A stretch of 64,000 nucleotides of DNA from IMGVR_UViG_3300030041_000009:124001-188000; one strand, 5' to 3'. Positions 2,771-33,171 are shown, counted from the stretch's first letter. Program-made: numbers and translations. Notes: generated by a model not told the origin, from the letters alone.

Positions 2771-2780
2771 TTCTAATAAT

Positions 2781-3680: not shown

Positions 3681-4368
3681 ATTTACAGAAAATAAAACAT
3701 TGGTACCGATTAAGAATCAATCATATATTAATTATTATATACACAAATGTCTTGGAGTTAATAATAAATATCATGATTCTAAAAATGATTACTCTATATC
3801 ATCTTTATATGGTGGAAACCTAACTGAAGATAAGTTACATTTATCATTTAAGAATGGAGGAATTATTGTAGTAACTTCAAAAAATGAAGAATTTTTGAAT
3901 GATTTAATAAGTGGAGTGATGTCTAATCAAGATTTAAATTGGGGAATGAAATTTAATAAAATTAATTTTATCTTTGAAAAATTTATAAATGGATGGAATC
4001 ATTTCGCAACATTATCTCCATTTATTATTAGAAAGCATATTAATAAAAAGAAATATACTTATTCAACTTTAAATGATTCTGATTTCGTATATATTGTAAA
4101 AAACCATATTATAAAAAAATTGAGTAAAATTTATAACGGTATTAATTTAAAAGATTTTGATGTTAAAATAATAAATCATCCTTCACATAAAGTAAAGAAA
4201 ATAATGGTTAAAAATGTCAAAAATGAAGCTAATCAATGTCACATTAGTATATTTTGTTCATCTGATGTGGCAGAAAAAATTTATAATTTAGGTATAGGAC
4301 AATCAACTGGTTCTGGATTTGGTACAATTTATAAAACAGAAAATAAAGATAAATATAAATTAGTATGA
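3664..4368 (+). CDS. cas6: CRISPR-associated endoribonuclease Cas6 (canonical, non-Cas6f)
   Basis: C-terminal Gly-rich loop GIGQSTGSGFG, YSISSL and TLSPFII motifs; abuts array leader. Confidence 0.92.
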   Translation: MRIKIEFTENKTLVPIKNQSYINYYIHKCLGVNNKYHDSKNDYSISSLYGGNLTEDKLHLSFKNGGIIVVTSKNEEFLNDLISGVMSNQDLNWGMKFNKINFIFEKFINGWNHFATLSPFIIRKHINKKKYTYSTLNDSDFVYIVKNHIIKKLSKIYNGINLKDFDVKIINHPSHKVKKIMVKNVKNEANQCHISIFCSSDVAEKIYNLGIGQSTGSGFGTIYKTENKDKYKLV

Positions 4369-4469
4369 TAAAAATGAATAAATATAATGATATACGTATA
4401 TTAATAACTCATTTTTATTTATTAATATATACTATAAATAACTCAATATCAATTAATTATAAATATCCT
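4369..4469 (+). promoter_or_regulatory. AT-rich CRISPR leader
   Basis: Between cas6 and the first perfect repeat; repeat variants accumulate at the far end; contains TAATATATAC (4423-4432), like other putative phage promoters. Confidence 0.7.
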
Positions 4470-6930
4470 GATATTATTTATATAAATCCGTAAGGGAGTC
4501 TCAACCAATGAATTGATGTCTATCCTGTTCTGCTAGATATTATTTATATAAATCCGTAAGGGAGTCTCAACTCTAGCTGTTCAATCTCTTTAAATAGATT
4601 TGATATTATTTATATAAATCCGTAAGGGAGTCTCAACATAGTGCAATTACTTATTCTAACATAACAGGATATTATTTATATAAATCCGTAAGGGAGTCTC
4701 AACAAATAAAATGATTGACTTTCAATTATATCAGATATTATTTATATAAATCCGTAAGGGAGTCTCAACATATGTTATATATATGTATTTAATTTGTCGA
4801 TATTATTTATATAAATCCGTAAGGGAGTCTCAACGAGCGTCAGTCAATGTTGAATTCGCTTTTGATATTATTTATATAAATCCGTAAGGGAGTCTCAACA
4901 CATATTGCTTATTTACATTAAATACGCTAGATATTATTTATATAAATCCGTAAGGGAGTCTCAACTATAGTCAATTAAGAAAAGAGTTAATCGGTGATAT
5001 TATTTATATAAATCCGTAAGGGAGTCTCAACACATATTGCTTATTAGAATCAAATACGCTAGATATTATTTATATAAATCCGTAAGGGAGTCTCAACATA
5101 TTTCTACAAATCATTCAAAGAAGAAATGATATTATTTATATAAATCCGTAAGGGAGTCTCAACAAGTGTAGCCAGAAAAAATGGGAAAAGTGCGATATTA
5201 TTTATATAAATCCGTAAGGGAGTCTCAACGAACCCTATTAATGACATTTTTAGTGCAATGATATTATTTATATAAATCCGTAAGGGAGTCTCAACAAAGC
5301 AGAGCAGGAAAAGAAGTGATTATATGATATTATTTATATAAATCCGTAAGGGAGTCTCAACAGTTGATGAAAAAAATAGGGAGGTTATAGGATATTATTT
5401 ATATAAATCCGTAAGGGAGTCTCAACAATGAATTAAAGGCAACCGAAGTTCTTGATGATATTATTTATATAAATCCGTAAGGGAGTCTCAACGAATTACT
5501 ACGTAAAACAAAAAGTGATTCAGATATTATTTATATAAATCCGTAAGGGAGTCTCAACTTATCATATTTAATAAATATAGTAATATAAGATATTATTTAT
5601 ATAAATCCGTAAGGGAGTCTCAACAAAGGAAGTGATATTATTTCAAATACAAAAGATATTATTTATATAAATCCGTAAGGGAGTCTCAACGAAGGTGGTG
5701 CCAGCACATCTATTAATAAGATATTATTTATATAAATCCGTAAGGGAGTCTTAACAAGGTATCAATTCTTTTTCTTAATTGGTAAGATATTATTTATATA
5801 AATCCGTAAGGGAGTCTCAACCCTGATTTTCTTGTAAAGATTTTCAAATAAGATATTATTTATATAAATCCGTAAGGGAGTCTCAACGGTGATTATACAG
5901 ATTTAGAATTAGAATTAGATATTATTTATATAAATCCGTAAGGGAGTCTCAACAGAGAAACAGTTTTAGTTTTAGGTACAACAGATATTATTTATATAAA
6001 TCCGTAAGGGAGTCTCAACATTGATTGATATTCAGTTATAAAATAATTTGATATTATTTATATAAATCCGTAAGGGAGTCTCAACGGTGTAACTCCAATT
6101 TTCACAGATGATTTTGATATTATTTATATAAATCCGTAAGGGAATCTCAACTTCTTACCAGTTGAATATTCAGAGTATTTAGATATTATTTATATAAATC
6201 CGTAAGGGAATCTCAACTATAGAAAAGGAGGGAAGACACTTGTTAAAGATATTATTTATATAAATCCGTAATGGAGTCTCAACAATGAATTACAACGGTG
6301 AATTCTGTATGCAGATATTATTTATATAAATCCGTAAAGGAGTCTTAACAGTTTATGATTTGCAGCATATTCAGATAATGATATTATTTATATAAATCCG
6401 TAAGGGAGTCTCAACAAATCAAATGATCATTTAGATGACAGTTTAGATATTATTTATATAAATCCGTAATGGAGTCTCAACATATATAGAAGAAAAACAA
6501 ATGACAAATATTGATATTATTTATATAAATCTGTAAGGGAGTCTCAACAATAAATCTCTTTCTATTGTTTCTATAGTTGATATTATTTATATAAATCCGT
6601 AAGGGAGTCTCAACTAAAGAAGAAAAAATAATTCTGAATGATAAGATATTATTTATATAAATCCGTAAGGGAATCTCAACTTCTCTTTCTATTTTTGAAA
6701 AAAATGATAAGATATTATTTATATAAATCCGTAAGGGAGTCTCAACATGATTTAGAATTTATTACATTAAGTGAAGATATTATTTATATAAATCCGTAAG
6801 GGAGTCTCAACGACGAACAAGGTCGCACAGAAGTCGAATTCGATATTATTTATATAAATCCGTAAGGGAATCTCAACAAAATAGTGACACTATTTAAATA
6901 TGTGTTTATTATATTTATATAAATCAGTAA
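4470..6930 (+). CRISPR. CRISPR array: 37 full-length 36-bp repeats (GATATTATTTATATAAATCCGTAAGGGAGTCTCAAC) plus a degenerate terminal repeat at ~6907-6930; 37 spacers of 29-31 nt
   Basis: Counted directly; ~66-bp period; point variants only from repeat 20 onward. Confidence 0.99.
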
Positions 6931-6996
6931 TTAAATTTATGATTTATATTATAAATAATTAAAAAATTATTTTTATTCACAATTAAAATAAAAAAT

Positions 6997-9294
6997 ATGA
7001 AATTAGAAGAAATTGTATCAAATAGTAGTGGAATATCATTAATAACTCATTCAAAAGCAGTTAAAAAAATAGGAATGATGTTATCAAAAAAGTTATCATT
7101 AAATGAAGACCTTGAAAAACAAATTTCAATAGCTTGTTTATTGCATGATTTAGGTAAATGTAATTTAGATTTTCAAAATTATATAAAATCAAAAAGTAAA
7201 ACAATTTCTTTTATTAATTCTCCAATATTTCATCATGAAATAAGTTGGGCATTTGTGTCATGTATTTTAAATAATGATGAATATAGATATTCTTTAGATT
7301 CAATATATTGGCATCATTCTAAACCAAAAATAAATTATATAAGTAATGATAATATATCATTAATTTTAAGTGATATGTGTGATGATGATAAAAAAAATAT
7401 TTTATCAATGTATAATTTTTTAATGAATGAAAATATATTATTTGAAGATATAAATTTTGAAAAATCTATCAATACTCCATTATATTATTTAAATGAACCA
7501 AATAGTTTAACAAATTCTAAAAATTCATTAGTAAGATCTTGTGTTATAACTGCTGATAGACTTGTATCAGCATCAGATCAAGAAAAAATATTGTATGATG
7601 ATGATTATTGTGAAGAATTAATAAACAATTTATCATATAAAGATACTAAAGTATATAGCAAACCTATTAATTATGATTCTATTCGTTTTGATTCTCAAGT
7701 TGATTACGCAAATCAATCATTAAATAATCGAACTACAATAATGAAAGCCCCAGCCGGTTTTGGTAAAACATTATTGGGGTTATTATGGTCATTAAAATCT
7801 AATAAAAAATTAATATGGGTATGCCCTAGAAATATTATTGCTGAAAATGTATATAATTCTGTTTTACAAGAATTAAAAAATATATCAGTTGAATTATCAG
7901 TTGAGTTATATTTAACAGGTAATAGACAGAAAACAAATAATGAAAACACTAAAGAATTTACATCTGATATTATAATAACTAATATAGATAATTATTTATC
8001 TCCTAATGTGAATAATTCTATTAGAAATAGATTATTTGTTATTAATTATTGTGATGTGATTTTTGATGAATATCATGAATTAATTAAAGATGATGCACTA
8101 TTTGCATGTTTTATTAATATCATGAAATCTAGACATATGTTAACAAATAGTCACACATTATTATTAAGTGCTACACAAACTATAATGGAATATTTATGGG
8201 ATGGAACAAATATAGATAAAAAAACTAAAATTTTACCAAATAAAAATTCTCATTATACATCTGCACATAATGGTAAATATTTGATTAATTATATTGATGA
8301 TATTGATACAATAACTAATGAAAAAGATTCAGTTGTTATTATGAATTCTATTTCAAATTCTCAAAGATTATATTGTTATAAAAAAGGCGATATTTTAATA
8401 CATAGTAGATATATAGATTCTGATAAAGAAAAAATAATGAATAAAATTATTCATTTATATGGCAAAGAAAATAAAAATATTTTGAATAAAGATAGTATTA
8501 TATCAGCACCTATTTTACAAGCATCTATGGATATATCATTTTTAAATTTAACAGATAGTGTGATGTCTCCAGAAACTACTTTACAAAGAATAGGTCGATG
8601 TGATAGGTGGGGACATTTTTATTATAAAAAAAATAAAACTCCAAAAATAAATTTATTTTTTAATGAAAATAAAAGTGAATTTAGAAACTCAGAAAACACT
8701 AGTATATCAAATCAATATGATTTAGAATTAAATAAATTATGGATTTCATTTATTAAAAAACATATTATTAACGGAAATTTATATTCAATAAATGAATTAT
8801 ATGAATATTATAATATGTTTAATAATGAAAATAATGAAAATTTAAAAAAGTTTATCACATCTAAACTAAAAACAAGTTTATTAAATTTATGTAAAATTGA
8901 ACCGTATAAGATGATGGAGAAATCTAAAAACAATACAATTAAAAATAATAATACTAAATTAAGAAGTGGAGGAGATATATATTGTATATATAAATATGCA
9001 AAAAAAAGACAAATGACGGACTCATTTAGTGTAGATTTTAATCGAGATATTAAAAAATCTGAACCAATAACAGGTTTAGATAGTAAAATTAAGAGAATAA
9101 TAAAGAATATTATAAAAATTAAGGATGATAGATTTTTTTATAATAAATATTCGTTATTTAAAAATAATCAATATACTTTACCTATACTTAAAGATTATGC
9201 CAGGAAAAAAGAAACCCCATATATTGCATTTGATAAAGTTTATTGTGAAAAATTAGGATTAGTAAAAAATGATATTTACGATAATTTAATATAA
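6997..9294 (+). CDS. cas3: Cas3 HD nuclease-helicase (no N-terminal Cas2 fusion)
   Basis: HD motifs HS, LLHDLGK, HHE, WHH, AD; SF2 motifs APAGFGKT, DEYH, SAT, HSR, QRIGRCDR; follows array. Confidence 0.95.
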   Translation: MKLEEIVSNSSGISLITHSKAVKKIGMMLSKKLSLNEDLEKQISIACLLHDLGKCNLDFQNYIKSKSKTISFINSPIFHHEISWAFVSCILNNDEYRYSLDSIYWHHSKPKINYISNDNISLILSDMCDDDKKNILSMYNFLMNENILFEDINFEKSINTPLYYLNEPNSLTNSKNSLVRSCVITADRLVSASDQEKILYDDDYCEELINNLSYKDTKVYSKPINYDSIRFDSQVDYANQSLNNRTTIMKAPAGFGKTLLGLLWSLKSNKKLIWVCPRNIIAENVYNSVLQELKNISVELSVELYLTGNRQKTNNENTKEFTSDIIITNIDNYLSPNVNNSIRNRLFVINYCDVIFDEYHELIKDDALFACFINIMKSRHMLTNSHTLLLSATQTIMEYLWDGTNIDKKTKILPNKNSHYTSAHNGKYLINYIDDIDTITNEKDSVVIMNSISNSQRLYCYKKGDILIHSRYIDSDKEKIMNKIIHLYGKENKNILNKDSIISAPILQASMDISFLNLTDSVMSPETTLQRIGRCDRWGHFYYKKNKTPKINLFFNENKSEFRNSENTSISNQYDLELNKLWISFIKKHIINGNLYSINELYEYYNMFNNENNENLKKFITSKLKTSLLNLCKIEPYKMMEKSKNNTIKNNNTKLRSGGDIYCIYKYAKKRQMTDSFSVDFNRDIKKSEPITGLDSKIKRIIKNIIKIKDDRFFYNKYSLFKNNQYTLPILKDYARKKETPYIAFDKVYCEKLGLVKNDIYDNLI

Positions 9295-9386: not shown

Positions 9387-11339
9387 ATGGTAAATAATAA
9401 CATTATTAGTGTTAAAGCTAAAAGAAATTTAATTAATGGTCAACTTACTAAAAATAATAAACCATACGTAAGAAAATTTGATTTTAGTCGTTATAGCAAT
9501 GATCAATTAGTTGATGCTTTATATAGTAAGAAATGGAATACTAATCGAAAAAAAGCACTTATTGCAATTAATAAATTAATAGATATTAGAATTAAAAATG
9601 ATAAATGTACTAAATATGATATTGAAAATCTAAAAGATATTGTATATAATAAAAAACACCAATTAATAAAATCTGCTAATAGTAATAGTAAAACAACTAC
9701 CACCACCACAACTATTCCAGCAAATACTAATTTAGCTCATAGTATAAAATTTCGTATTAATAAATTGATTTCTGAAATATATCGTCTAACTGGCATCAAA
9801 TTAGAAAAATTAAATAGAACTGATAATATTAATGATAAATCACACGTATTTGATGATCAGATTTTTGCATCATTAAGTTGCATATATAATATGTTATCAT
9901 CAAAACTTAATTCAAAACATAGTAGGTATAATATGTTAACTGCAGAAACTCAAGCAGGTAAAACTGGTGTTGTACGTAATATAATATATTTATTAGAAAC
10001 TTATCAAGAATTAAGAGAATATCTAAATTTGAAATTTAGAAGTAGTGTATTAATAACTCCAATGTGTGATAATTCAAATAAAGAACAATTAAAAACTGAC
10101 ATATCTCATGGAGAGTGTCGGCAAGATGATCAAAAAATATTAAAGAGGAATGGTATTATGCATAATCCAGATTTAATTCGTTGGTCAAGAAAAAATAAAG
10201 TAGGTGATTTAAATAATTGTATTATATTTATTGATGAAGCTCATTTAGCATCAAATGTTGATAGTGCTATGAATAGTTATCTTCAAAAAAATGGTATAAA
10301 TTTAAATGGTTCAACTGATTTATCAAAAAAAAATATTTTCTTATTTTCTATATCAGCAACTCCGTATGAAGAACATGTTGGTAATATTTTATATAAAAGA
10401 AAGAACACTATTGAATTATCTCACGGACCTAATTACAAAGGCTTAGAATATTTTTTAAAAAATAATTTTTTAAGAGAATCATTTGATTTATCAACAACAG
10501 AAGGTGAAAAACATTTTATAAATGAAGCAGAAAGCTTTAATAATAAAATAGGATATTATATTGTTAGAATAAATAAAAATACAAATACAAATAATCTAAT
10601 ACCTGATGGATTTAAAACTTTGACATATTATGAGAAAGATAAAGAAGTTATTAATGATGTATTAAAAAATGCACCAGATGCTCCTACCATAATATTTATT
10701 AAGGAGAAAATGAAGCAATCATATCAATTAGAGAAAGAAAATATTGTAATGTTATTTGATAGAACTACAGTTAATGATTCTACATATAGAACAAGTTTTA
10801 TTGTTCAAAGTTTTGCAGGTAGATCATGTGGATATCATAATTATAATTTTATAATTTATACAGAAATAAAACACATCAAACTTCATCTTTCATATTTAAA
10901 AAATAAATATAATGTTCCTCCATGTAAACATGTAATTAAGAAAAATAAATTTAATTTTAAAAATGGTATAAAAGAACAAGCTTCATCATATAGTGATCAA
11001 AATGATTCATCACATACAAATGATTTTTCATTAAAAATTGTACATAATACACCGAATGAAGGTTATATAGAATTAAATAATAATATCATAACAATATATT
11101 TAGATAAAGATAAAAATTTAGTATTATCTAAAAAATCAAAAGTAGAAACAAATTTTCTTGCATCATATATTGAAGATTATGTTGTTATTTCTGATATTAA
11201 AACTCCTTGTGCAAATTTAATTGATGTAAAAAATGCATTAACATATTACTGTCAACTTATATCATCAAAAATAACAATAAATGATATTAAAACTAAAAAT
11301 GGTAAAAAATTTATTGATTTATTAGAATTTGAATTTTAA
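9387..11339 (+). CDS. SF2 helicase-like ATPase
   Basis: TQAGKT (Walker A), IDEAH (Walker B), SATP, QSFAGRSCGY (motif VI). Confidence 0.75.
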   Translation: MVNNNIISVKAKRNLINGQLTKNNKPYVRKFDFSRYSNDQLVDALYSKKWNTNRKKALIAINKLIDIRIKNDKCTKYDIENLKDIVYNKKHQLIKSANSNSKTTTTTTTIPANTNLAHSIKFRINKLISEIYRLTGIKLEKLNRTDNINDKSHVFDDQIFASLSCIYNMLSSKLNSKHSRYNMLTAETQAGKTGVVRNIIYLLETYQELREYLNLKFRSSVLITPMCDNSNKEQLKTDISHGECRQDDQKILKRNGIMHNPDLIRWSRKNKVGDLNNCIIFIDEAHLASNVDSAMNSYLQKNGINLNGSTDLSKKNIFLFSISATPYEEHVGNILYKRKNTIELSHGPNYKGLEYFLKNNFLRESFDLSTTEGEKHFINEAESFNNKIGYYIVRINKNTNTNNLIPDGFKTLTYYEKDKEVINDVLKNAPDAPTIIFIKEKMKQSYQLEKENIVMLFDRTTVNDSTYRTSFIVQSFAGRSCGYHNYNFIIYTEIKHIKLHLSYLKNKYNVPPCKHVIKKNKFNFKNGIKEQASSYSDQNDSSHTNDFSLKIVHNTPNEGYIELNNNIITIYLDKDKNLVLSKKSKVETNFLASYIEDYVVISDIKTPCANLIDVKNALTYYCQLISSKITINDIKTKNGKKFIDLLEFEF

Positions 11340-12185: not shown

Positions 12186-12246
12186 TTATTAACTACAATT
12201 AACCAAAAAAATCTATTTTTTATTTGTCCAATTAAATGTTTTTTTA

Positions 12247-12256
12247 TATCTTTGCA
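12247..12256 (+). promoter_or_regulatory. Bacteroidota-type promoter box TATCTTTGCA
   Basis: Strong consensus match with TTTG ~25 nt upstream. Confidence 0.7.
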
Positions 12257-12285: not shown

Positions 12286-13044
12286 ATGGAAAAAACACAA
12301 ATTGAACAAAGAGTTGAACACGTAGCAGGTTCAAAGATTAAAACTAGATGGACAAAAAATGATGTCATTATAGCTTTTTTATATACTAAATTTACATTAA
12401 GAAAGGTTGGAGTAACTGATGATGATACTCAACTTGAAAGTTTTGTTAATGAATATATTGGTTCAATTGCGAATTCAATAAAAATGGAAGCATTAAATAT
12501 AAAATATGCATTGTGCATAAAACATAACGAAAAAGTAGAAGGATTAGCACATTATTCAAAAATACAAGAAGAAGTTGTAAATGAATATGATAAATGTGAT
12601 GAAAATGAATTAGCAGAAATTGTAAACTTAATATTAGATAATATGACCGAAGAAGAAAAAAAGATTAATTTATCAATTGCAGAAGGTATAAATGCAGAAC
12701 TTAATGCAGAAAAAGAAAAACATAGGTTAGAAGTTCTTGCAAAAAAAGAAGAGAAAAAAAGAAAAGCTCTTGTTAAGAAAGCTCAGAAAGAAAAATATGC
12801 TAAATTATCAGGAGATTGTAAACCAATGACATTTAAACAAATGAATCCTTCAAAAGTAGCATATGTTCAAACTGTTGTTAATAATGTATTTGCTAGTATC
12901 GGAGATGTTCTTGATCATAAAGCATATGGTAAAGGCGCAGTAAAAGAAATAGATGGTAATAGACTTACTATAAATTTTCGTGATAGTAAAATAGGCAGTA
13001 AGGTTATGTTATTTGATGAAAAGTTTTTTATTTTTTCAGAATAA
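12286..13044 (+). CDS. Helical N-terminal domain plus C-terminal PcrA/UvrD-like Tudor domain; paralog of 15541..16290
   Basis: KIKTRWTxNDVIIA shared; C-terminal GDVLDHKAYGKGAV..IGSK. Confidence 0.7.
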   Translation: MEKTQIEQRVEHVAGSKIKTRWTKNDVIIAFLYTKFTLRKVGVTDDDTQLESFVNEYIGSIANSIKMEALNIKYALCIKHNEKVEGLAHYSKIQEEVVNEYDKCDENELAEIVNLILDNMTEEEKKINLSIAEGINAELNAEKEKHRLEVLAKKEEKKRKALVKKAQKEKYAKLSGDCKPMTFKQMNPSKVAYVQTVVNNVFASIGDVLDHKAYGKGAVKEIDGNRLTINFRDSKIGSKVMLFDEKFFIFSE

Positions 13045-13150
13045 TTATTATTTATAATCGTTATATTAATATAAAAAGAGAAGATTTATTCTTCTCTTTT
13101 TTGTTATACAAATTTTTTTGATTATCTTTATAAGATAATAAATAAATAAT

Positions 13151-13504
13151 ATGAAAAAAATGTATATGATTTTTATTTCTGTGTGTGTAATATTTATGCT
13201 ATGCTTATGTAAGAATGATAAAAATAAAATAGAAAAATCTATTATAGTTTCTCTAAAATCTCAAATTAATGAGTATAATAATGGTAATTTGAATATAATA
13301 AATTATGAAAATGTGAAACATTCAAAAGTAAATGATAGCATAAGATATTATATTTTAAATTATAATAGTGTTGATATATATGGATTTAAAGATGAAACTC
13401 ATACTGAAGGATATTTTAATATGAAAACTGGTGAAGATGTAACTGATGTCGAAAAAAATACAGATAATGAAACTAATAGATTTATAAATACTGAAATATA
13501 TTAA
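13151..13504 (+). CDS. Putative lipoprotein or membrane-anchored protein
   Basis: Basic N-terminus, hydrophobic stretch, Cys. Confidence 0.55.
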   Translation: MKKMYMIFISVCVIFMLCLCKNDKNKIEKSIIVSLKSQINEYNNGNLNIINYENVKHSKVNDSIRYYILNYNSVDIYGFKDETHTEGYFNMKTGEDVTDVEKNTDNETNRFINTEIY

Positions 13505-13519
13505 TATGATATTAAAAAA

Positions 13520-13888
13520 GTGTTGAAAAAAAATTTAAATAAAGATGAGAAAGAAATATATGATCTTGTTAAACGATTAAAATATGGTAGAATATCAGCA
13601 TTCACAACTAGAAATAAAAATAAAACAGAATTGATTGATTGGAGAATTTATCGTGATATCATAAATTCTGTAGTAATTGAAACTTGTTGTGGACGTTCGT
13701 GTATAAATAATAAACGTATATATTATGATATTAAATTTGTGTCTGAATATGATAATTATGGTAGTAAATTTTCAAATTTTGATATGATGTTAATTTATAT
13801 ATTAAATTGGTACAATGGGTGCATTGATGAATATATAACAATAATATCACGTAAGAAAAAATTAATTGAAATTGAAAAAGTAGAATAA
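13520..13888 (+). CDS. Hypothetical protein with C-terminal RKxKL tag
   Basis: ends SRKKKLIEIEKVE. Confidence 0.6.
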   Translation: MLKKNLNKDEKEIYDLVKRLKYGRISAFTTRNKNKTELIDWRIYRDIINSVVIETCCGRSCINNKRIYYDIKFVSEYDNYGSKFSNFDMMLIYILNWYNGCIDEYITIISRKKKLIEIEKVE

Positions 13889-13932
13889 TCATTATTATAG
13901 TTTTTTTATATATACTGTAAAAAATCAAATAT

Positions 13933-14175
13933 ATGAAATTATTTAATTGGTTTAAGAAAAAACCTATTCACATTGAATGTGATCAATATGAATATTGTCC
14001 GACATATTTAGCATATTTAGGTAAATATGGAAAAGATTCAGATGAAATTAAATTGTGTAAAAATTCAGAATCTAAATATTGTACTAAATATCATCTTATT
14101 AATCAAACTAAATGGATTGATATGACTGAAGAAGAAAGAATGAAATTGATTAAAGATGTTATAAATAAAATTTAA
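13933..14175 (+). CDS. Small Cys-containing hypothetical protein
   Basis: ORF track; TATATA motif upstream. Confidence 0.6.
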   Translation: MKLFNWFKKKPIHIECDQYEYCPTYLAYLGKYGKDSDEIKLCKNSESKYCTKYHLINQTKWIDMTEEERMKLIKDVINKI

Positions 14176-14426
14176 TAATCTAAATCATTTGAATTTAATT
14201 TATCTATTTTGTCTTTTCTATCTTTTAATAAGAAATAATTATATTCATCTACAAATAATCTACAAGAATTATTATAGTCAACAATTTCATTAAAATATGG
14301 ACTATTTATATTATCACATGTTGTATGCTGATTATCTTGTTGATTACATTCTTTTAATATATCATCAAGAAATATTGATGTTTCTGAGTATTTTGAATAC
14401 ATGCAATTTAAACAATTATCATTCAT
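14172..14426 (-). CDS. Small Cys-rich protein with RKxKI tag
   Basis: CxxC...C; RKDKIDKL. Confidence 0.6.
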   Translation of the reverse strand: MNDNCLNCMYSKYSETSIFLDDILKECNQQDNQHTTCDNINSPYFNEIVDYNNSCRLFVDEYNYFLLKDRKDKIDKLNSNDLDY

Positions 14427-14428
14427 AT

Positions 14429-15196
14429 TTAAAATTTTCTTTCACGTTCCATTCTTTTTAAAGTATCATATGGAGTTTCACCTTTTTTCATTTTATAATT
14501 ACAGCCAGTTGTACCACCTTTCCAGGTACCTTTCCTTTCACCTATATCATCACTAAATTCTATTTCAATGTCTTTACTTATTAATCTAGGAAACTTCAAC
14601 CAAGTGAACCATTTCCATCTCCATTCACGTTCTTGTACTCTAATTGTTGCTAAACAATTTTGTTCATCATCATATTTTGTGTTATATGTATACGGATATG
14701 TTTCTGAAAAAATAATATCTTTCCATTTGTTTTTATTCCAAAACTCCATATTTCTATTTTTCTTTGTTTCATTAATCCAAGTATCATTTTTAGCAAGGCA
14801 ACTTGTTCTTATCCATTCCCAATTCCAAGGTAAATAAAAAACTTTGTGTTTCATTCCACAACTAAACCATATTTTTCTTTCAAGAATATATACTCCATAT
14901 GTTGGCGCAGTACATTGATCGTAAAGAACCTTATCAAATTTTTTCTTTATTTTTATATTTTTATTAGATAAAATAGAAATTTTATCTTTTCTTTTTTCTT
15001 TAATATTTTTTTCAACTTCAACTTTTTTATAATGCTTCCAAGGTAAATATAAAAATAATTTACCCCAAATAAAATATATTTGAAGTATTGGCTTTGTATC
15101 ATAATATCCTGCTAAATGATATTGTATACTAAATCCACTCCACTCTGGAGTAAATTCAAAATATTTATTTTTAATTTCTTTTTTACTCATTATCAA
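14429..15196 (-). CDS. Trp-rich phage hypothetical protein
   Basis: ORF track; GERKGTWKGG motif. Confidence 0.7.
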   Translation of the reverse strand: MIMSKKEIKNKYFEFTPEWSGFSIQYHLAGYYDTKPILQIYFIWGKLFLYLPWKHYKKVEVEKNIKEKRKDKISILSNKNIKIKKKFDKVLYDQCTAPTYGVYILERKIWFSCGMKHKVFYLPWNWEWIRTSCLAKNDTWINETKKNRNMEFWNKNKWKDIIFSETYPYTYNTKYDDEQNCLATIRVQEREWRWKWFTWLKFPRLISKDIEIEFSDDIGERKGTWKGGTTGCNYKMKKGETPYDTLKRMERERKF

Positions 15197-15470
15197 GTTT
15201 TATTAATTTTAGTACTCTATTTACGACTATTATATTATTTGGTAATTTCATATTATATAATTTAGTTAAAGTTTCTTGTTTAAATTTAAATCCGTGGTGA
15301 TAAATATCAAATGAAATTTTTGCAAATTCATCACCTGCATTTATCCAATCTGTCCATTCTTCACCTGAATTATTAAGTCCGTAAGATATACATTGTCTAT
15401 ATAAATTTCTTAATGCTGTGCTATTTTTAAGATATTTAGCAAGCTCAGTTTCTTTTTCGTCGTATTCCAT
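15183..15470 (-). CDS. Hypothetical protein
   Basis: ORF track. Confidence 0.6.
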   Translation of the reverse strand: MEYDEKETELAKYLKNSTALRNLYRQCISYGLNNSGEEWTDWINAGDEFAKISFDIYHHGFKFKQETLTKLYNMKLPNNIIVVNRVLKLIKLDNE

Positions 15471-15540
15471 TTTTTATATTAGTATAAAATATTTATTATG
15501 TTTTCAAAAAAATATATATACTAAAAAATAATAGTTAAAT

Positions 15541-16290
15541 ATGAGAAACTTGATAAGTTTTCAAAAAATGTTTGAATATGCCACAGGTGAAAAAATAAAA
15601 ACCAGATGGACAGAAAATGATGTAATTATAGCATTATATTATGAAAAATTTGGATTTAGTAAACTTGGTATTAAAGATGATAAAATTGAAAAATTTGTAA
15701 ATGAATATATTGGTTCAAATGAATCATCATTAAAAATGGAAGCATTGAACATAAGATATGCATTAGGATTAAAATATAATGAAGAACCAGAAGGATTATC
15801 TAGATTTTCAAAATTACATGTGAAAGTTATAAATGAATACGATAGTTTTTCTGAACCAGAATTAAGAGAAGTTGTAGAGAATATTATAGATAATACAACT
15901 GAATCTCAAATATTTAAGAATGTATCACAAGCAGAAAATCAAAGAAAAGAAGTTCTTAAAAGAAGAGAATCTAAAAGAAAGGCAAAAGAAATGAATCCAG
16001 GTAGAAGAATAGGAAGACCAAGTTCTAGTGATATAGAAATAAAAAATATACCAGTAGATGATTCAACTGATTCATATGGTAGACCAATATCAAAACTTAA
16101 TGATATAAAATCAGATGAACAATCATTTGTTCAAGTTGGTGATATTCTTAATCATAAAAAATTTGGTAGAGGAGATGTGATATCTGTTAATGGAAATTTA
16201 ATTGAAATAGATTTCTTTGAAAATGAATTAGGTACAAAAAAACTTATATTTAAACCTGAATTGTTCAACTGGACTCCTGATTTATTTTAA
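15541..16290 (+). CDS. Paralog of 12286..13044 with N-terminal ..FE tag and C-terminal Tudor-like domain
   Basis: QVGDILNHKKFGRGDVISV..LGTKKL. Confidence 0.75.
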   Translation: MRNLISFQKMFEYATGEKIKTRWTENDVIIALYYEKFGFSKLGIKDDKIEKFVNEYIGSNESSLKMEALNIRYALGLKYNEEPEGLSRFSKLHVKVINEYDSFSEPELREVVENIIDNTTESQIFKNVSQAENQRKEVLKRRESKRKAKEMNPGRRIGRPSSSDIEIKNIPVDDSTDSYGRPISKLNDIKSDEQSFVQVGDILNHKKFGRGDVISVNGNLIEIDFFENELGTKKLIFKPELFNWTPDLF

Positions 16291-16346
16291 AATGAACCTT
16301 TATAAATAACTATATAAATAAAAATTCAAAAAACAAAAGAATTATT

Positions 16347-17681
16347 ATGACACAAATAATCAAATTAAACAACCAACCTGATGACTTAATAAGTCAATTA
16401 AAAGATAAAGAATTATTAATATATGAAGATATTCAAGGATCTCAAGTATTTGTACAATGGGACGGAAATAAATTCTCAATAAGACCAAAATCAATTAATA
16501 ATACAGATCTAAATTTTGTAGATTTAGCTATACAAAAATATTATAATTTCGTATTTCAATATTTTTACACATTACCGGATTTTGTAACTAATTTATTATC
16601 AAAAACTTGGTGGTTTTGTTTTGAATATTTTCCAGATAATCAGCCAGGTAATATTGAATATAAGAAAATTCCGAAGAATAATTTAATATTAACGTGTATA
16701 GTTAAAGGTACAAAATATAAATATAATTACAATGAGATATTAGAATATGCTAAATTATTCAACGTAGATGCATTACCAGTGATATTTAAAGGTAAATTGA
16801 ATGATAAGCAGTTAGAGGTAATTAACTTGTTCTTACATACATCAAAAGAAGATTTAGATTATGTATATGGAGAATCTAATTTTGCATATTTTTTTTATAA
16901 GATATTAAATCCTCAATTAAACAATTCATTTTTAATGGATAGTTTCAATGATAATTTAGAAAAGATAATAGTTAGAATAAACGGAGATGATGAATTTTCA
17001 TTTGAGATATTAAATCCGTCGTATGAAAAAATGAATCTTGATAGTAGAACAGATTATTTAGAGAATTATTCGTTAATATTATTAAATTTCTTAGAATTTT
17101 TACAACTTATTAGTTTTGATAAAATAAAACTAAAAGAGATTACAAAAGAAGAATTATATATTGAATTAATTTCAGCAATATTTAATGATTATGTTGAGAA
17201 TATTACTAAAGAAATAAAAGATTGGAATTTATCAATACCTACATTTTTTTCAGAGGATAAATTTAAAATCAATACATTTTTATTGAAGAATGATAAAACA
17301 ATTGATTATATAAAATCTGATGATAAAATTGAGTATATTTTTAAACTTATATTGAGTTCATTTAATAAAAAATTAAAGAAGCCTATTGGCATTTTTAACG
17401 AAAAAACTTTAGAAATGTTTAATAGAGAAGTAGATAAAATTTCTATTTATTTGGATAATATGCTGAAAGTGAATCGTGAATATTTATTGAGAAATAATGA
17501 TTTATTGAATTTTAAAGATTATTTTAATGTTAATTTTAATACTGATTCAGAAAAAAATATTTATCCTGACGTAAAAAAATTAGGAGCAGAAATACCTTCA
17601 GGTGGAGAAAAAAAGAAAGAAAATCCTAAAGAAGAATTAAAAGGAGGTAAACCTTTTGATATAAAAAAAGGTAAATTTTAA
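16347..17681 (+). CDS. RNA ligase (Rnl2-like) fold protein, apparently catalytically degenerate
   Basis: YEDIQGS (motif I, K->D), FCFEY, LPVIFKG, LEKIIVR, FEILNP. Confidence 0.55.
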   Translation: MTQIIKLNNQPDDLISQLKDKELLIYEDIQGSQVFVQWDGNKFSIRPKSINNTDLNFVDLAIQKYYNFVFQYFYTLPDFVTNLLSKTWWFCFEYFPDNQPGNIEYKKIPKNNLILTCIVKGTKYKYNYNEILEYAKLFNVDALPVIFKGKLNDKQLEVINLFLHTSKEDLDYVYGESNFAYFFYKILNPQLNNSFLMDSFNDNLEKIIVRINGDDEFSFEILNPSYEKMNLDSRTDYLENYSLILLNFLEFLQLISFDKIKLKEITKEELYIELISAIFNDYVENITKEIKDWNLSIPTFFSEDKFKINTFLLKNDKTIDYIKSDDKIEYIFKLILSSFNKKLKKPIGIFNEKTLEMFNREVDKISIYLDNMLKVNREYLLRNNDLLNFKDYFNVNFNTDSEKNIYPDVKKLGAEIPSGGEKKKENPKEELKGGKPFDIKKGKF

Positions 17682-18970: not shown

Positions 18971-19303
18971 TTATAAATTAAATTTGTTTGATGCTAATAT
19001 AATTTCTGATTTAAAATCATTAGCTAAGCATTGATTTAAAATTATATTATGTTTTATGTCTTTAACGTCAATCCACCAATCCCCTTTATATTTTTCTGTT
19101 ACATATTGATGATCAATTATAAATGGATTTCCTTCATCATCAAAATTTTCCTCATATATTTTTAATACTAAATATTTTTTACCTTCTTTTGGTTCAGTAC
19201 TATTATAATTTTTCCTTTTTTCACCGTGAATGCATATTACTTCATCACCTACTGAAAAATATATATCGTCATTTTCTTCAAATATTTTAAAATTTGTTAT
19301 CAT
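18971..19303 (-). CDS. Dual-tag family protein (MITNFKIFE ... NKFNL)
   Basis: Terminal motifs. Confidence 0.75.
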   Translation of the reverse strand: MITNFKIFEENDDIYFSVGDEVICIHGEKRKNYNSTEPKEGKKYLVLKIYEENFDDEGNPFIIDHQYVTEKYKGDWWIDVKDIKHNIILNQCLANDFKSEIILASNKFNL

Positions 19304-19791
19304 ATGTTAAATTTGTTTGCTGATTTATTTAATTTAAATTCTTCAAATTCTTCTGGAGTTAATACACCAGATGTTTGGAATATTACAAATCCGTTATTTT
19401 TTAATTCTTCTGTGAAATTTTTAATAGCATAATCAGCATAATAAAAAATTTCTGAGTAATCTTCATTACCTTCGTCAGTTAATTCACCAGAATCATCAAT
19501 ATAATATCCTATTGTAATACAAGGAGCTTCCATCATAATACCAATATCAGAAATATTATAAATATATAATAATTCAGAGTTTGAAGATATATTTTCAAAA
19601 TAATCAAAAAAATCTGCTTCCTTTATATCAATATCTTCTTCAACTTTTTCTTTTCCTTCTTCAGTTAATGATATTTTAAGATTCCCATTTTCTAATCTTT
19701 CTAATGTTAAATAATTACCACTGCGTAACTCACGTGTATCATGAGATATCATAGTCTCATTTAGAGTAAATATATTAAATTTTGTTATCAT
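19300..19791 (-). CDS. Dual-tag family protein (probable start MITKFNIF ... NKFNI)
   Basis: Start reassigned to the ATG next to the upstream stop. Confidence 0.7.
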   Translation of the reverse strand: MITKFNIFTLNETMISHDTRELRSGNYLTLERLENGNLKISLTEEGKEKVEEDIDIKEADFFDYFENISSNSELLYIYNISDIGIMMEAPCITIGYYIDDSGELTDEGNEDYSEIFYYADYAIKNFTEELKNNGFVIFQTSGVLTPEEFEEFKLNKSANKFNI

Positions 19792-19792
19792 A

Positions 19793-20233
19793 TTATATGT
19801 TAAATTTATTTGTTGTTTTATATATTTCAATTCCTCCAACTTCATTAATACTATTTAATAATTCTGCTATATTTTCTGTGTCACCAACATATCCAGGATT
19901 AGAATTTTCATCTAAATTGTTAATTGGAAATCCTTCAATATATAATTCATCTTCTAATCCAGAACTTTCCATACTCCAAATTTTATATGTTTTCCCAAAT
20001 ATACTAACTATAGCATAAGCACCTTGATATAAATCGTGTCCTCTAATATCTTTTATTTTTAATATAGTATCATTATCTAAATTTGAAATTATATAATCTA
20101 ATCTTTCTTCTAAATACCTAATTAAACTTGCTTCTTCACTATCATCATCAGGATTATCTTTAACATAGTTCCAATTTACATCTCTACTCCATTCTCCTGT
20201 TTCGTATATTTTAAATGTTTTTAAATGTTTCAT
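19793..20233 (-). CDS. Dual-tag family protein (MKHLKTFKIYE ... NKFNI)
   Basis: Terminal motifs. Confidence 0.75.
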   Translation of the reverse strand: MKHLKTFKIYETGEWSRDVNWNYVKDNPDDDSEEASLIRYLEERLDYIISNLDNDTILKIKDIRGHDLYQGAYAIVSIFGKTYKIWSMESSGLEDELYIEGFPINNLDENSNPGYVGDTENIAELLNSINEVGGIEIYKTTNKFNI

Positions 20234-21043: not shown

Positions 21044-21129
21044 TGCCTTGTGATGGAATTGGCTAAACATTTCAGTCTTTGAAACTGATGCTCATTGTGA
21101 GCTTGTGGGTTCGAACCCCACCAAGGCGA
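21044..21129 (+). tRNA. tRNA with TTG (Gln) anticodon on a class II long-variable-arm body
   Basis: Acceptor TGCCTTG/CAAGGCG, anticodon arm TCAGT-CTTTGAA-ACTGA, variable stem GCTCA/TGAGC, T-arm GTGGG-TTCGAAC-CCCAC; CCA not encoded. Confidence 0.85.
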
Positions 21130-21135
21130 CAATAT

Positions 21136-21206
21136 TCTTTCTTGATGTAATGATAGCATATCATTTTCTGACAATGAATGACTAAGTTCAAATCTTAGAG
21201 AAAGAA
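21136..21206 (+). tRNA. tRNA-Gln(CTG), AT-rich
   Basis: Acceptor TCTTTCT/AGAAAGA, anticodon arm TCATT-TTCTGAC-AATGA, T-arm CTAAG-TTCAAAT-CTTAG; D-loop has GA instead of GG. Confidence 0.75.
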
Positions 21207-21207
21207 C

Positions 21208-26099: not shown

Positions 26100-26156
26100 A
26101 GATAATACATTATTTTGAAATAAAAAAATGATATAATGATTTTTATATATAATAAT

Positions 26157-26486
26157 ATGAAATATTTAAAATATTATGAAAATATAGAAGATAATTTAGA
26201 AGTTGGTGATTATGTATTAATTAAAATTAATATACTTCCTTATACTCAAAAACAAATAGATACAGAGAATTTTATAAATAATACTATTGGTAAAATAATT
26301 GATATTATTACTGACCGTAATGATGTTGTTGTGTTATATGAAAATGTGCCTGAAACTATTAAATCTTATTTTAATATTAATAATGGATTAGATATTCGAA
26401 CTTTTGATATTAATAGAATAGTTGAGCATGGTAAAACAAAAGAGCAATTAGAATTAAAATTACAAGCAAATAAATTTAATTTATGA
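26157..26486 (+). CDS. Dual-tag family, VGDYV/NNxIG/YxNxP subfamily
   Basis: MKYLKYYE ... LQANKFNL. Confidence 0.75.
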   Translation: MKYLKYYENIEDNLEVGDYVLIKINILPYTQKQIDTENFINNTIGKIIDIITDRNDVVVLYENVPETIKSYFNINNGLDIRTFDINRIVEHGKTKEQLELKLQANKFNL

Positions 26487-31157: not shown

Positions 31158-31171
31158 ATTTTTATTTATTT

Positions 31172-32043: not shown

Positions 32044-32044
32044 T

Positions 32045-32905: not shown

Positions 32906-33171
32906 ATGTTAAATTTATTTGCTGATTGTTCTAATTCATATTGTATTTTTTCTTCTGGCGTTGCTAATCTAAATCTATTATCATTCCAATCATAATTAAT
33001 ATTATAAAAATTGTATTGTGTAACACCACTCCTATATGTTATAATATTTTCAATTTTGTAAAATTTGCCATATTCTAATAACTCTTCAGTATCTGAATGA
33101 TCTATACATTTAACCACATCTCCTATTTTTATTTGTTCATTATTTTCAAATAATTTGAAATTAGTTATCAT
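32902..33171 (-). CDS. Dual-tag family protein
   Basis: MITNFKLFE ... NKFNI. Confidence 0.75.
   Translation of the reverse strand: MITNFKLFENNEQIKIGDVVKCIDHSDTEELLEYGKFYKIENIITYRSGVTQYNFYNINYDWNDNRFRLATPEEKIQYELEQSANKFNI

What the first reader, a model, noticed from the sequence alone, without database searches (positions are those of the whole stretch)
12286..16290. Paralog pair fusing a restriction-enzyme-like N-domain to a PcrA/UvrD-type Tudor domain, in host-promoter and tagged versions
Seen: 12286 and 15541 share RWTxNDVIIA..EYIGS..S(I/L)KMEALNI..EGLxxxSK and a C-terminal GDxLxHKx(Y/F)GxGxV..GxK. 12286 follows a TATCTTTGCA host-type promoter and has no tag; 15541 follows a TATATA motif and starts MRNLISFQKMFE. 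Knowledge: the PcrA/UvrD C-terminal Tudor domain binds RNA polymerase. The N-domain recalls the WTxxE..Y..SxxMKxxN domain of many HNH restriction endonucleases. Inference: a DNA-binding RNAP recruiter or inhibitor, delivered both from the virion and by early expression.
Basis: partly seen in the sequence, partly recalled or inferred. Interest (0 to 1): 0.6.

Follow-up and report, generated by a model that had tools for sequence, protein, structure and literature searches.

The report
Megaphage paralogs with UvrD-type Tudor domain
Two related genes of a huge peat-bog phage each join a helical domain, otherwise found at the front of HNH restriction nucleases, to the small Tudor domain that bacterial UvrD/PcrA helicases use to grip RNA polymerase; this suggests an untested phage adaptor that docks on the host's transcription or repair machinery.

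Summary
The paralog pair is real: 12286-13044 (A, 252 aa) and 15541-16290 (B, 249 aa) are 40% identical (E 1e-56). Both are conserved side by side in related 326-711 kb phage contigs from peat.

Both domain calls hold.
- **C-terminus:** it is a PcrA/UvrD-type Tudor domain. The Pfam match is below threshold in A and B but reaches E 4.7e-7 in homologs. A profile search of the PDB puts the PcrA Tudor first. The AlphaFold model's top structural matches are all UvrD/PcrA C-terminal domains. The four residues needed for RNA polymerase binding in PcrA are kept.
- **N-terminus:** this six-helix domain is homologous to the N-terminal domain of HNH_2 endonucleases (hhalign 97.5%, E 5e-12) and of a NOV_C nuclease. 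No phage relative carries a nuclease. It has no solved structural relative and belongs to PHROG 21120, a family of unknown function.

A sits behind a Bacteroidota-type TTTG-N20-TAnnTTTG promoter, found at 10 of 336 genes. B sits behind the phage's common TATATATA motif.

The "tag" and virion-delivery idea is not supported: B does not match the genome's MKYIKTFE...NKFNI termini. Binding to RNA polymerase remains an inference, and the complex prediction gave no verdict. The N-domain is acidic, so the basic, AT-hook-bearing linker is the likelier DNA contact.

The parts
12223..12254 (+). Bacteroidota sigma-A-type promoter-like site upstream of paralog A: TTTG (12223-12226), a 20-nt spacer, then TAtcTTTG (12247-12254)
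   Evidence: Sequence read. The composite motif lies upstream of 10 of 336 genes, against 0.6 expected from shuffles. Its position and most bases are kept in a relative 76% identical at the protein level, where the -7 element reads TATCTTCG.
12286..13044 (+). Paralog A, 252 aa
   Evidence: ORF. 40% identical to B. Orthologs at 76-99% identity, including one on a 711 kb contig. Exact-match contigs from two metatranscriptome libraries lie inside it.
12331..12684 (+). A, N-terminal six-helix domain (aa 16-133); the HNH-N-type domain, PHROG 21120
   Evidence: AF2 model medf285c3a4aa with pLDDT 94-98 over aa 21-130. A's own match to phrog_21120 is weak, E 0.005. hhalign against HNH_2 N-domains gives 97.5%.
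12685..12876 (+). A, basic K/E-rich helical linker (aa 134-197; pI 9.6 for aa 121-197)
   Evidence: The corresponding region of B has low pLDDT.
12877..13029 (+). A, PcrA/UvrD-type Tudor domain (aa 198-248) with H211, Y214, K239, M241
   Evidence: Pfam PF21196 at E 0.024, below threshold. Aligns with B's Tudor domain and with PcrA. Residue mapping.
15501..15540 (+). Conserved upstream block of paralog B containing TATATATA (15513-15520); a phage-type promoter-like motif
15541..16290 (+). Paralog B, 249 aa
   Evidence: ORF. Orthologs at 64-94% identity. One RNA-library contig covers 16059-16377.
15580..15930 (+). B, N-terminal six-helix domain (aa 14-130)
   Evidence: AF2 model m6d1060e83d12 with pLDDT 96-98 over aa 21-130. 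A profile of this domain finds 97 proteins among 1.84 billion.
15931..16125 (+). B, basic linker (pI 9.8 for aa 121-192) with two AT-hook-like GRP cores (aa 154-160 = 16000-16020; aa 179-183 = 16075-16089)
   Evidence: Sequence and charge. B orthologs carry a canonical RGRP, and the Pfam AT_hook family is found in two distant family members.
16126..16260 (+). B, PcrA/UvrD-type Tudor domain (aa 196-240) with H205, F208, K233, L235
   Evidence: Pfam E 4.7e-4. A PDB profile search puts 5dma first. The Foldseek top 7 are all UvrD/PcrA C-terminal domains, probability 1.0. VIA gives Z 7.4, rmsd 1.8 A over 50 residues to 7egs_B.

Best explanation
A and B are two copies of a modular phage adaptor, expressed at different stages.

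The C-terminal Tudor domain is the docking module. It is inferred to bind the beta-hairpin 'helicase-interaction motif' that host UvrD/PcrA recognises on the RNA polymerase beta subunit (lobe/SI1), and which is also present on UvrB.

A flexible basic linker follows; in B it carries AT-hook-like GRP cores and would contact AT-rich DNA. This linker tethers the N-terminal six-helix domain. That domain is borrowed from the non-catalytic front end of HNH_2 and NOV_C nucleases, where it probably acts as a recognition or regulatory module.

The net effect would be to place this domain on transcribing or initiating host RNA polymerase and so modulate or redirect transcription. A would be made first, from a host-type (Bacteroidota sigma-A) promoter. 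B would be made later, from the phage's own TATATATA-type promoter.

Shown: paralogy, both domain homologies, the fold, conservation of the PcrA contact residues, and the two promoter-like motifs.
Inferred: the binding partner, the timing and the effect on transcription.
For: Paralogy and conservation. The gene order Cas3 - 654 aa gene - A - ... - Acb3 - B - 444 aa gene is conserved in the 326 kb, 330 kb and 26 kb contigs examined, and orthologs of both A and B are on record from a 711 kb contig.

Tudor domain:
- PF21196 matches at E 4.7e-4 (B) and 0.024 (A), and in 14 family members the best is 4.7e-7. DUF3553 and CarD_TRCF_RID also appear.
- NCBIfam pcrA/uvrD models match through their C-terminal ends in 13, 11 and 6 members.
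- A PDB profile search puts the PcrA Tudor 5dma first, at E 0.0016, followed by many UvrD chains.
- In the AF2 model the domain has pLDDT about 94.
- The Foldseek top 7 and the VIA top 4 are all UvrD/PcrA C-terminal domains. They include 7egs_B, which is UvrD's C-terminal domain bound to the E. coli RNA polymerase lobe (Z 7.4, rmsd 1.8 A over 50 residues).

Contact residues: PcrA H681, W684, K712 and L714 are needed for RNA polymerase binding (PMC5397179). They correspond to H, F/Y, K and L/M in A and B; H and K are invariant in the 12-sequence alignment.

N-domain: the family has 97 members. About 22 carry the Tudor domain, 21 carry an alternative C-terminal G(K/F)DPSKMK peptide, and about 10 carry AT-hooks. 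This pattern fits a constant N-module with exchangeable address modules.

Cultured relative: the standalone member in Cellulophaga phage phiST scores 49.9 bits and lies two genes upstream of the phage RNA polymerase gene.

Promoters.

Presence in RNA libraries: A in two studies and B in one.
Against: - No binding data exist. The complex prediction with B. thetaiotaomicron RpoB 1-560 gave no verdict.
- The host is unknown, and I could not check whether Bacteroidota RpoB carries the TGE hairpin motif.
- The same Tudor surface binds UvrB and other partners (PMC8318588; PDB 7egt), so the target need not be RNA polymerase.
- The N-domain core is acidic, and it has no significant structural match to a DNA-binding fold.
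- A and B themselves fall below Pfam's gathering score.
- The promoter assignments rest on motifs alone.
- The RNA-library contigs are at depth 2-5, and DNA carry-over is not excluded.
Confidence: 0.4

Rival explanations
1. Competitive decoy. The Tudor domain occupies the helicase-interaction hairpin on RpoB and/or UvrB so that host UvrD/PcrA cannot dock. This would disable UvrD-dependent repair, R-loop suppression or conflict resolution during infection. The N-domain and linker would only raise the local concentration on DNA.
For: The Tudor contact residues are conserved. PcrA's C-terminal domain shares one motif on RpoB, UvrB and other partners, and free UvrB competes with RNA polymerase for it (PMC8318588). 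Structures 7egs and 7egt show the same domain bound to the RNA polymerase lobe and to UvrB. The genes sit in a counter-defence neighbourhood, with Acb3 between them and a phage CRISPR-Cas system upstream.
Against: A bare Tudor domain would be enough for a decoy. Yet the N-domain is the more strongly conserved half: the N-domain alignment has 68% mean column identity and the C-terminal one 61%. The N-domain also occurs without any Tudor domain in most relatives. No direct data exist.
Confidence: 0.2
2. Anti-restriction or nuclease-regulating protein. The nuclease-less copy of the HNH_2/NOV_C N-terminal domain mimics or poisons host nucleases built on the same domain. It could do this by occupying their targets, by heteromerising with them, or by acting as an acidic DNA mimic.
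For: The N-domain is homologous to the front end of HNH_2 and NOV_C nucleases, one of them in a Bacteroidota plasmid (Hymenobacter). In HNH_2 enzymes, target recognition lies outside the catalytic domain (PMC5714182). The domain is acidic. It sits in a counter-defence neighbourhood.
Against: This gives no role to the conserved Tudor domain or its retained RNA polymerase/UvrB contact residues. There is no evidence that these nucleases oligomerise through the N-domain. None of the HNH proteins compared here has been characterised as a defence enzyme.
Confidence: 0.12
3. General phage DNA-associated (nucleoid or chromatin-like) proteins. The basic/AT-hook linker and an SH3-like barrel would bind nucleic acid directly, with no specific host protein partner.
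For: The linkers are basic, with GRP cores, in a genome of 22% GC. AT-hooks occur in distant family members. SH3/Tudor-like barrels often bind nucleic acids; KOW and Spt5 rows appear.
Against: The best matches are specifically the UvrD/PcrA subfamily, with its signature GDxVxHxx(F/W)GxG and its protein-contact residues, rather than generic SH3 folds. The Tudor domain of B is acidic (pI 4.8) and that of A near neutral (pI 6.8).
Confidence: 0.15
4. One reading: B is an N-terminally tagged version that is packaged in the virion and injected, while A is made de novo.
For: The N-terminus of B (MRNLxSFxxMFEY) is conserved in its orthologs. Some distant homologs begin MKYLKKFKIFEY or MKYINSFKIFEY, which resembles the genome's common MKYIKTFE start.
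Against: B scores -1.1 bits on the MKYIKTFE PSSM, rank 59 of 272, and lacks the paired NKFN[IL] C-terminus. That 'tag' forms part of a junction of about 45 nt between tandem genes that overlap by 4 nt, in 33 gene pairs whose cores are unrelated. This points to a gene-junction element rather than a packaging signal. A has a leader of equal length. No virion proteome is available.
Confidence: 0.05

Closest known systems
C-terminal Tudor domain of PcrA/UvrD helicases (Pfam PF21196; PDB 5dma, 7egs, 7egt, 6yi2, 9dqs)
   Same: Same fold. Same signature GDxVxHxx(aromatic)GxGxV...GxKxL. Same position at the C-terminus after a flexible linker. The four residues needed for RNA polymerase binding are conserved.
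   Different: There is no SF1 helicase core; the domain is attached to an unrelated helical domain in a 250-aa phage protein. A and B score below Pfam's gathering threshold. The partner is untested.
CarD / CdnL and the Mfd (TRCF) RNA-polymerase-interacting domain
   Same: A small Tudor-like barrel that docks on the RNA polymerase beta subunit is combined with an all-helical second domain. One family member hits CarD_TRCF_RID at E 1.2e-4. CarD chains appear among the structural matches at Z 5.5-5.9.
   Different: The domain order is reversed. The Tudor domain is of the UvrD subtype, which binds the lobe/SI1 hairpin rather than beta1 (PMC8318588). The helical domain is unrelated to CarD's. This is an analogy, not membership.
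N-terminal domain of HNH_2 (COG3440-type) and NOV_C/DUF3883 nucleases, e.g. the ORFs at L006:2495-3244, L009:1180-1965, L010:874-1896, L011:1186-1890 and L007:3974-4762
   Same: A homologous helical domain of about 100 aa with the shared pattern W(T/S)xx(D/E)..(I/L)A(L)Y..(E)LAxx(I/L)G.., SxxMKxxNF..L, GLSxxSKxxxxVxxE(F/Y). hhalign gives 97.5%, E 5e-12 over 98 columns. Profile scores are 28, 24.7 and 24 bits against at most 11.5 for 1000 shuffles.
   Different: None of the 107 phage-family sequences carries an HNH or PD-(D/E)xK domain. The function of this domain in the nucleases is itself unknown.
PHROG 21120 / Cellulophaga phage phiST CGPG_00030 (142 aa, hypothetical protein)
   Same: The same N-domain as a standalone phage protein. 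The A5 profile scores it at 49.9 bits. BFVD Foldseek gives probability 1.0, TM 0.55. Twenty of 107 family members hit phrog_21120, best E 8.8e-20. The host is a member of the Bacteroidota.
   Different: It has no Tudor domain. It lies two genes upstream of a single-subunit phage RNA polymerase gene. Its function is unknown.

Membership tests
PcrA/UvrD Tudor domain (PF21196) | Match to the Pfam model at or above the gathering score (23.9 bits) | tested here: inconclusive
   A scores 14.9 bits (E 0.024) and B 20.4 bits (E 4.7e-4), both below the cut-off. Fourteen homologs match, best E 4.7e-7. A PDB profile search puts 5dma first at E 0.0016.
PcrA/UvrD Tudor domain (PF21196) | Small SH3/Tudor beta-barrel that superposes on solved PcrA/UvrD C-terminal domains | tested here: met
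   Model pLDDT is about 94. The Foldseek top 7 are all UvrD/PcrA C-terminal domains, probability 1.0, with TM by target 0.49-0.75. VIA gives Z 7.4, 7.3, 6.8 and 6.7, with rmsd 1.8-2.0 A over 47-50 residues.
PcrA/UvrD Tudor domain (PF21196) | Conserved partner-binding residues (G. stearothermophilus PcrA H681, W684, K712, L714) | tested here: met
   A has H211, Y214, K239, M241. B has H205, F208, K233, L235. H and K are invariant in alignments A1 and A3.
PcrA/UvrD Tudor domain (PF21196) | Physical binding to the RpoB lobe/SI1 hairpin or to UvrB | not testable with these tools
   Complex prediction returned no verdict. No sequence of the host RpoB was available.
PcrA/UvrD helicases (whole protein) | SF1 helicase core (UvrD-helicase, UvrD_C) | tested here: not met
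   No helicase domain appears in A, B or any of the 107 relatives. Membership therefore holds at domain level only.
HNH_2 endonucleases carrying this N-domain | Homology of the N-terminal helical domain | tested here: met
   hhalign gives 97.5%, E 5e-12 over 98 columns. HMM scores are 28.0, 24.7, 13.2 and 10.6 bits for four HNH proteins and 24.0 for a NOV_C protein, against at most 11.5 for shuffles.
HNH_2 endonucleases carrying this N-domain | His-Me finger catalytic domain (PF13391) | tested here: not met
   Present in the Neisseria ORF at aa 146-197, E 7e-14. Absent from A, B and all 107 family members.
PHROG 21120 | Match to the PHROG profile | tested here: met
   A matches at E 0.0053 over aa 19-133, a weak match. 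Twenty of 107 members match, best E 8.8e-20. B alone has no hit at E 0.001.
   The PSSM score of B is -1.1 bits, against a family median of 25.2; B ranks 59th of 272 non-family proteins. A scores -27.4.
   B ends ...NWTPDLF and A ends ...FIFSE. Both stand alone behind intergenic promoter-like regions.
AT-hook proteins (PF02178) | RGRP core flanked by basic residues | tested here: inconclusive
   B has GRRIGRP and YGRP. B orthologs have RRRGRP. Pfam AT_hook is significant only in two distant members. A has none.

The most novel reading that the evidence does not exclude
The N-domain defines a previously undescribed effector module shared between restriction-type nucleases and phages. In phages it has shed the nuclease and is aimed at host machines by interchangeable 'address' modules. 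In this megaphage lineage the address is a captured UvrD-type Tudor domain; elsewhere it is a G(K/F)DPSKMK peptide or AT-hooks. The megaphage would then hijack the UvrD docking site on Bacteroidota RNA polymerase twice during infection, with an early paralog and a late one. This would be a new class of phage transcription or repair takeover factor, and the first known use of the helicase-interaction motif by a virus.
Probability: 0.25. Interest if true: 0.7.

Novelty: new variant of a known kind. Interest (0 to 1): 0.5.

Why it matters
Phage factors that bind host RNA polymerase are classic tools for understanding transcription. Almost none are known for Bacteroidota or for megaphages.

If A and B dock through the UvrD-type Tudor domain, they would show that viruses exploit the 'helicase-interaction motif' on RpoB/UvrB. 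They would also give a handle on the poorly understood beta-lobe/SI1 surface.

Separately, the work gives a first set of contexts to an uncharacterised domain: PHROG 21120, which is also the N-terminus of many HNH_2 endonucleases. These contexts are nuclease, Tudor, AT-hook and peptide-tail fusions, and they make its function testable.

If the Tudor domain proves to bind something else, the finding reduces to an unusual domain fusion in an uncultured phage.

Tried and rejected
- **Complex prediction** (RPOB_BACTN 1-560 with B 188-249): score 0.14 against a mark of 0.34. This is no verdict, and counts neither for nor against binding.
- **ESM Atlas:** the search by shape gave only weak UvrD-like rows, TM at most 0.32, driven by the Tudor domain. 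The search by features for the N-domain gave no usable hit.
- **N-domain against solved structures:** the PDB sequence profile gave nothing. Foldseek PDB gave nothing, best E 2.4. The best VIA-wide match was Z 3.9; the homeodomain and Myb rows lie within noise for helical models. They are kept only as a weak lead.
- **Word search with the 107-sequence alignment:** no new architectures.
- **tblastn of B, P0045 and P0107 against cultured phages:** no match. Only a permissive search with A's N-domain, together with the BFVD fold hit, led to Cellulophaga phage phiST.
- **Sub-threshold hits:** the Pfam GP3_package hit in A (19 bits against a cut-off of 29.4) and the PyrI hit in B were dismissed as chance.
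- **Giant eukaryotic virus:** rejected. There is no NCLDV capsid match, though that search rang in no control genome either, so it shows little. The positive evidence is that gp32, Acb3 and Cas3/Cas6/Cas7fv are present, and the standard genetic code fits.
- **Searches within the 214 kb record (about 30% of the genome):** no sigma-70 region 2 and no RNA polymerase beta domain, and no helicase-interaction motif in the phage proteome.
- **Tool limits:** Context look-ups for P0028 and P0016 gave only short contigs. Read laying failed twice before answering.
- **L022:** what looked like a third paralog is simply a B ortholog of a related strain.

Full report
**Setting.** The window is the minus strand of positions 65980-129979 of a 214,510-base IMG/VR virus record that CheckV rates about 30% complete. 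GC content is about 22%, and the standard genetic code fits. It is a phage, not a eukaryotic giant virus. It encodes a gp32-type single-strand-binding protein, an Acb3 anti-CBASS protein and a Cas3-like HD-helicase. Related contigs carry Cas7fv-like and Cas6 genes upstream, and an array of 66-nt period lies at 4404-6800. Orthologs of both genes in question are on record from contigs as long as 711 kb, so this is a megaphage lineage. Near-identical DNA occurs in peat, soil and freshwater metagenomes from 14 studies.

**The observation.** ORFs 12286-13044 (A, 252 aa) and 15541-16290 (B, 249 aa) are intact and 40% identical end to end, E 1e-56. The record holds exactly these two copies. Each has its own ortholog group, at 76-99% identity for A and 64-94% for B. 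The two groups sit in conserved synteny: Cas3, a 654-aa gene, A, small genes, Acb3, B, a 444-aa gene.

**C-terminal domain.**
- Pfam PcrA_UvrD_tudor matches both proteins below its threshold (E 0.024 for A, 4.7e-4 for B). Among 107 family members, 14 match it (best E 4.7e-7), two match DUF3553 and one matches CarD_TRCF_RID.
- NCBIfam pcrA and uvrD models match through their extreme C-termini.
- A profile of the last 55 residues, searched against PDB sequences, puts the PcrA Tudor domain 5dma first (E 0.0016), followed by many UvrD/PcrA chains.
- The AlphaFold2 model of B has mean pLDDT 86 and about 94 over this domain.
- The top seven Foldseek matches are all UvrD/PcrA C-terminal domains, probability 1.0. 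In the Foldseek-independent search the top four are the same family: Z 7.4, 7.3, 6.8 and 6.7, rmsd 1.8-2.0 A over 47-50 residues. They include 7egs_B, the UvrD C-terminal domain bound to the E. coli RNA polymerase lobe, and chains of 7egt, the same domain bound to UvrB.
- Sanders et al. tested H681A, W684A, K712A and L714A in G. stearothermophilus PcrA for loss of RNA polymerase binding and report that mutating these conserved surface residues substantially reduces it (PMC5397179). By the alignment these are H211/Y214/K239/M241 in A and H205/F208/K233/L235 in B. H and K are invariant across the 12 orthologs.

The proteins are not helicases.

**N-terminal domain.** A profile of residues 1 to about 130, searched against 1.84 billion representative proteins, found only 97 proteins at E 1e-3 or better. 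These are standalone proteins of 90-170 aa and some longer fusions. None has an HNH domain. Twenty match PHROG 21120, a family of unknown function.

The domain folds with high confidence (pLDDT 94-98) into six helices. It has no relative among solved structures. Foldseek found nothing. The best exhaustive match is Z 3.9, to homeodomain or Myb three-helix folds over the first three helices, which is within noise.

- It weakly hit a 249-aa ORF in a Neisseria gonorrhoeae record and a 262-aa Terribacillus protein. The first carries Pfam HNH_2 at residues 146-197; the second carries NOV_C/DUF3883 at 148-236.
- The Neisseria N-domain then recovered three annotated HNH endonucleases, from Hymenobacter, Priestia and Psychrobacter.
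- The phage-family HMM scores these five at 28.0, 24.7, 24.0, 13.2 and 10.6 bits, always collinearly over the same N-terminal region. The best of 1000 shuffles scored 11.5 bits.
- Profile-profile comparison of four HNH N-domains with the 94-sequence phage alignment gives 97.5% probability, E 5e-12, over 98 columns.

The homology is real. What the domain does is not known. In HNH_2 enzymes, target recognition lies outside the catalytic finger (PMC5714182). That, together with fusion to two unrelated nuclease folds, suggests a recognition or regulatory module. However, the core is acidic in A and B (pI 4.7-4.8, net -6 to -7) and in most relatives (median pI 5.5), so direct DNA binding by this domain is doubtful. 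The linkers, by contrast, are basic (pI 9.6-9.8). In B and its orthologs they carry AT-hook-like GRP or RGRP cores.

**Family architecture.** Of 110 sequences, about 22 end in the Tudor signature, 21 end in a conserved G(K/F)DPSKMK peptide, and about 10 carry AT-hooks. This looks like a constant N-module with exchangeable C-terminal address modules.

A cultured representative exists. Cellulophaga phage phiST CGPG_00030 (142 aa) scores 49.9 bits on the profile and is the single clear BFVD structural match (probability 1.0, TM 0.55). It lies two genes upstream of that phage's RNA polymerase gene. Its host belongs to the Bacteroidota.

**Promoters.** Upstream of A, TTTG (12223-12226) and TATCTTTG (12247-12254) are 20 nt apart, matching the Bacteroidota sigma-A consensus (-33 TTTG, -7 TAnnTTTG; from my own knowledge). 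The composite motif stands upstream of only 10 of 336 genes. Controls gave 2 on the antisense strand, 0.6 in shuffles and 0 of 2000 coding windows. It is largely kept in a diverged relative.

Upstream of B, TATATATA (15513-15520) belongs to a T-rich+TATATA(T/A)A motif that peaks about 30 nt before the start codon of 64 genes. The 40 nt before B's ATG are nearly invariant in a diverged relative, while the sequence further upstream is not.

Different regulation of A and B is therefore plausible but unproven. Contigs from metatranscriptome libraries match A exactly in two studies and the 3' part of B in one. Depth is 2-5, and DNA carry-over cannot be excluded.

**The 'tag'.** Sixty-four of the 336 predicted proteins in the record end in [KQN][FY]N[ILM], and most of them begin MK[YH][IL]KxFE. 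With the termini trimmed, these proteins fall into 37 BLAST clusters, 32 of them singletons. Thirty-three neighbouring pairs overlap by exactly 4 nt. The two 'tags' are therefore the two halves of one conserved gene junction of about 45 nt.

B does not belong to this set. It scores -1.1 bits on the PSSM, ranks 59th of 272, lacks the C-terminal motif, and stands behind its own intergenic region. A and B have leaders of equal length. Some distant Tudor-bearing homologs do start MKYLKKFKIFEY, so a historical link cannot be excluded. Nothing supports virion delivery.

**Mechanism.** The best-supported reading is a modular adaptor. The UvrD-type Tudor domain would dock on the hairpin 'helicase-interaction motif' that PcrA/UvrD recognise on RpoB SI1/lobe and on UvrB (PMC8318588). 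The basic linker would touch DNA, and the N-domain would act on, or be positioned by, the complex. The architecture is the mirror image of CarD (a Tudor-like RNA-polymerase-binding domain plus a helical domain), which is an analogy only.

Rival readings are a decoy that blocks UvrD docking, an anti-nuclease protein, and a plain DNA-associated protein. One complex prediction with Bacteroides RpoB 1-560 gave no verdict. I could not obtain a Bacteroidota RpoB sequence to look for the motif.

**Novelty.** Literature searches found the PcrA/UvrD Tudor work, but no phage protein using this domain and no description of the N-domain. The finding is a new domain architecture built from one known docking domain and one uncharacterised, nuclease-associated domain. 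I class it as a new variant of a known kind, of moderate interest until binding is tested.

Noticed in passing
window 18971-20233, 26136-26995, 30705-33171, 45455-50172, 53453-55732, 60460-64000, and elsewhere in G000: 64 of the 336 predicted proteins in the record end in [KQN][FY]N[ILM], and most begin MK[YH][IL]KxFE. Their cores are mostly unrelated (37 BLAST clusters, 32 singletons). 33 tandem neighbours overlap by exactly 4 nt, so the two termini form one conserved junction of about 45 nt (...AAATTTAAttTATGAAAtAt.TaAAa..TtTgAa). This could be a cassette-junction, translational-coupling or recombination element rather than a protein tag.
   Followed up: partly
window 1697-9294: A phage-borne CRISPR-Cas locus. 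ORFs at 1697-2770, 2781-3680 and 3664-4368 correspond to genes that carry Cas7fv-like and Cas6 Pfam hits in relatives. An array of at least 32 units of 66-nt period lies at about 4404-6800. A Cas3-like HD+DEAD helicase lies at 6997-9294. Spacer targets were not examined.
   Followed up: partly
window 14429-15196 (-): An Acb3 CBASS-inhibitor homolog (Pfam PF25187, E 3e-46) lies between the two paralogs. In relatives, an ankyrin-repeat gene sits next to it but is absent here.
   Followed up: partly
window 9387-11339 (+): A 650-aa protein with Walker-A-like (AETQAGKTG) and DEAH-like (IDEAHL) motifs has no Pfam or PHROG hit. It is one of only 10 genes with the full Bacteroidota-type promoter motif, like paralog A just downstream.
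   Followed up: no
window 21044-21207 (+): Two adjacent tRNA-Gln genes (anticodons TTG and CTG). The first is 87 nt long, with its anticodon at position 36, which is unusually long.
   Followed up: no
proteins P0024-P0104 (distant N-domain homologs): 21 standalone homologs end in a conserved G(K/F)DPSKMK(K/S)hG peptide. 13 homologs start with a different recurrent leader, MKKIIxLTESQLxxIIK. Both are unexplained short motifs that recur across otherwise different architectures.
   Followed up: partly
L023:3995-4423 (Cellulophaga phage phiST, NC_020842.1 16485-16913): CGPG_00030, a 142-aa hypothetical protein of a cultured Bacteroidota phage, is a clear member of the N-domain family (49.9 bits). 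It lies two genes upstream of the phage RNA polymerase gene and downstream of the primase/helicase gene.
   Followed up: partly
L004:13175-13924: The B ortholog on the 330 kb contig was called from an internal Met (240 aa, P0003). An in-frame upstream ATG gives MRNLKSFNQMF..., matching the conserved B-type N-terminus.
   Followed up: yes
L006 (NZ_CP119142.1): A 2.17 Mb Neisseria gonorrhoeae record is filed in the plasmid collection as a 'plasmid' and is clearly chromosome-sized. Its HNH_2 ORF at L006:2495-3244 is not in the distributed gene table.
   Followed up: no
window 33715-34689 (-) and 16347-17681 (+): A gp32-like single-strand-binding protein (Pfam E 4e-20). Immediately downstream of B lies a conserved 444-aa gene with no family hit; one RNA-library contig spans the B/444-aa junction, 16059-16377.
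   Followed up: no
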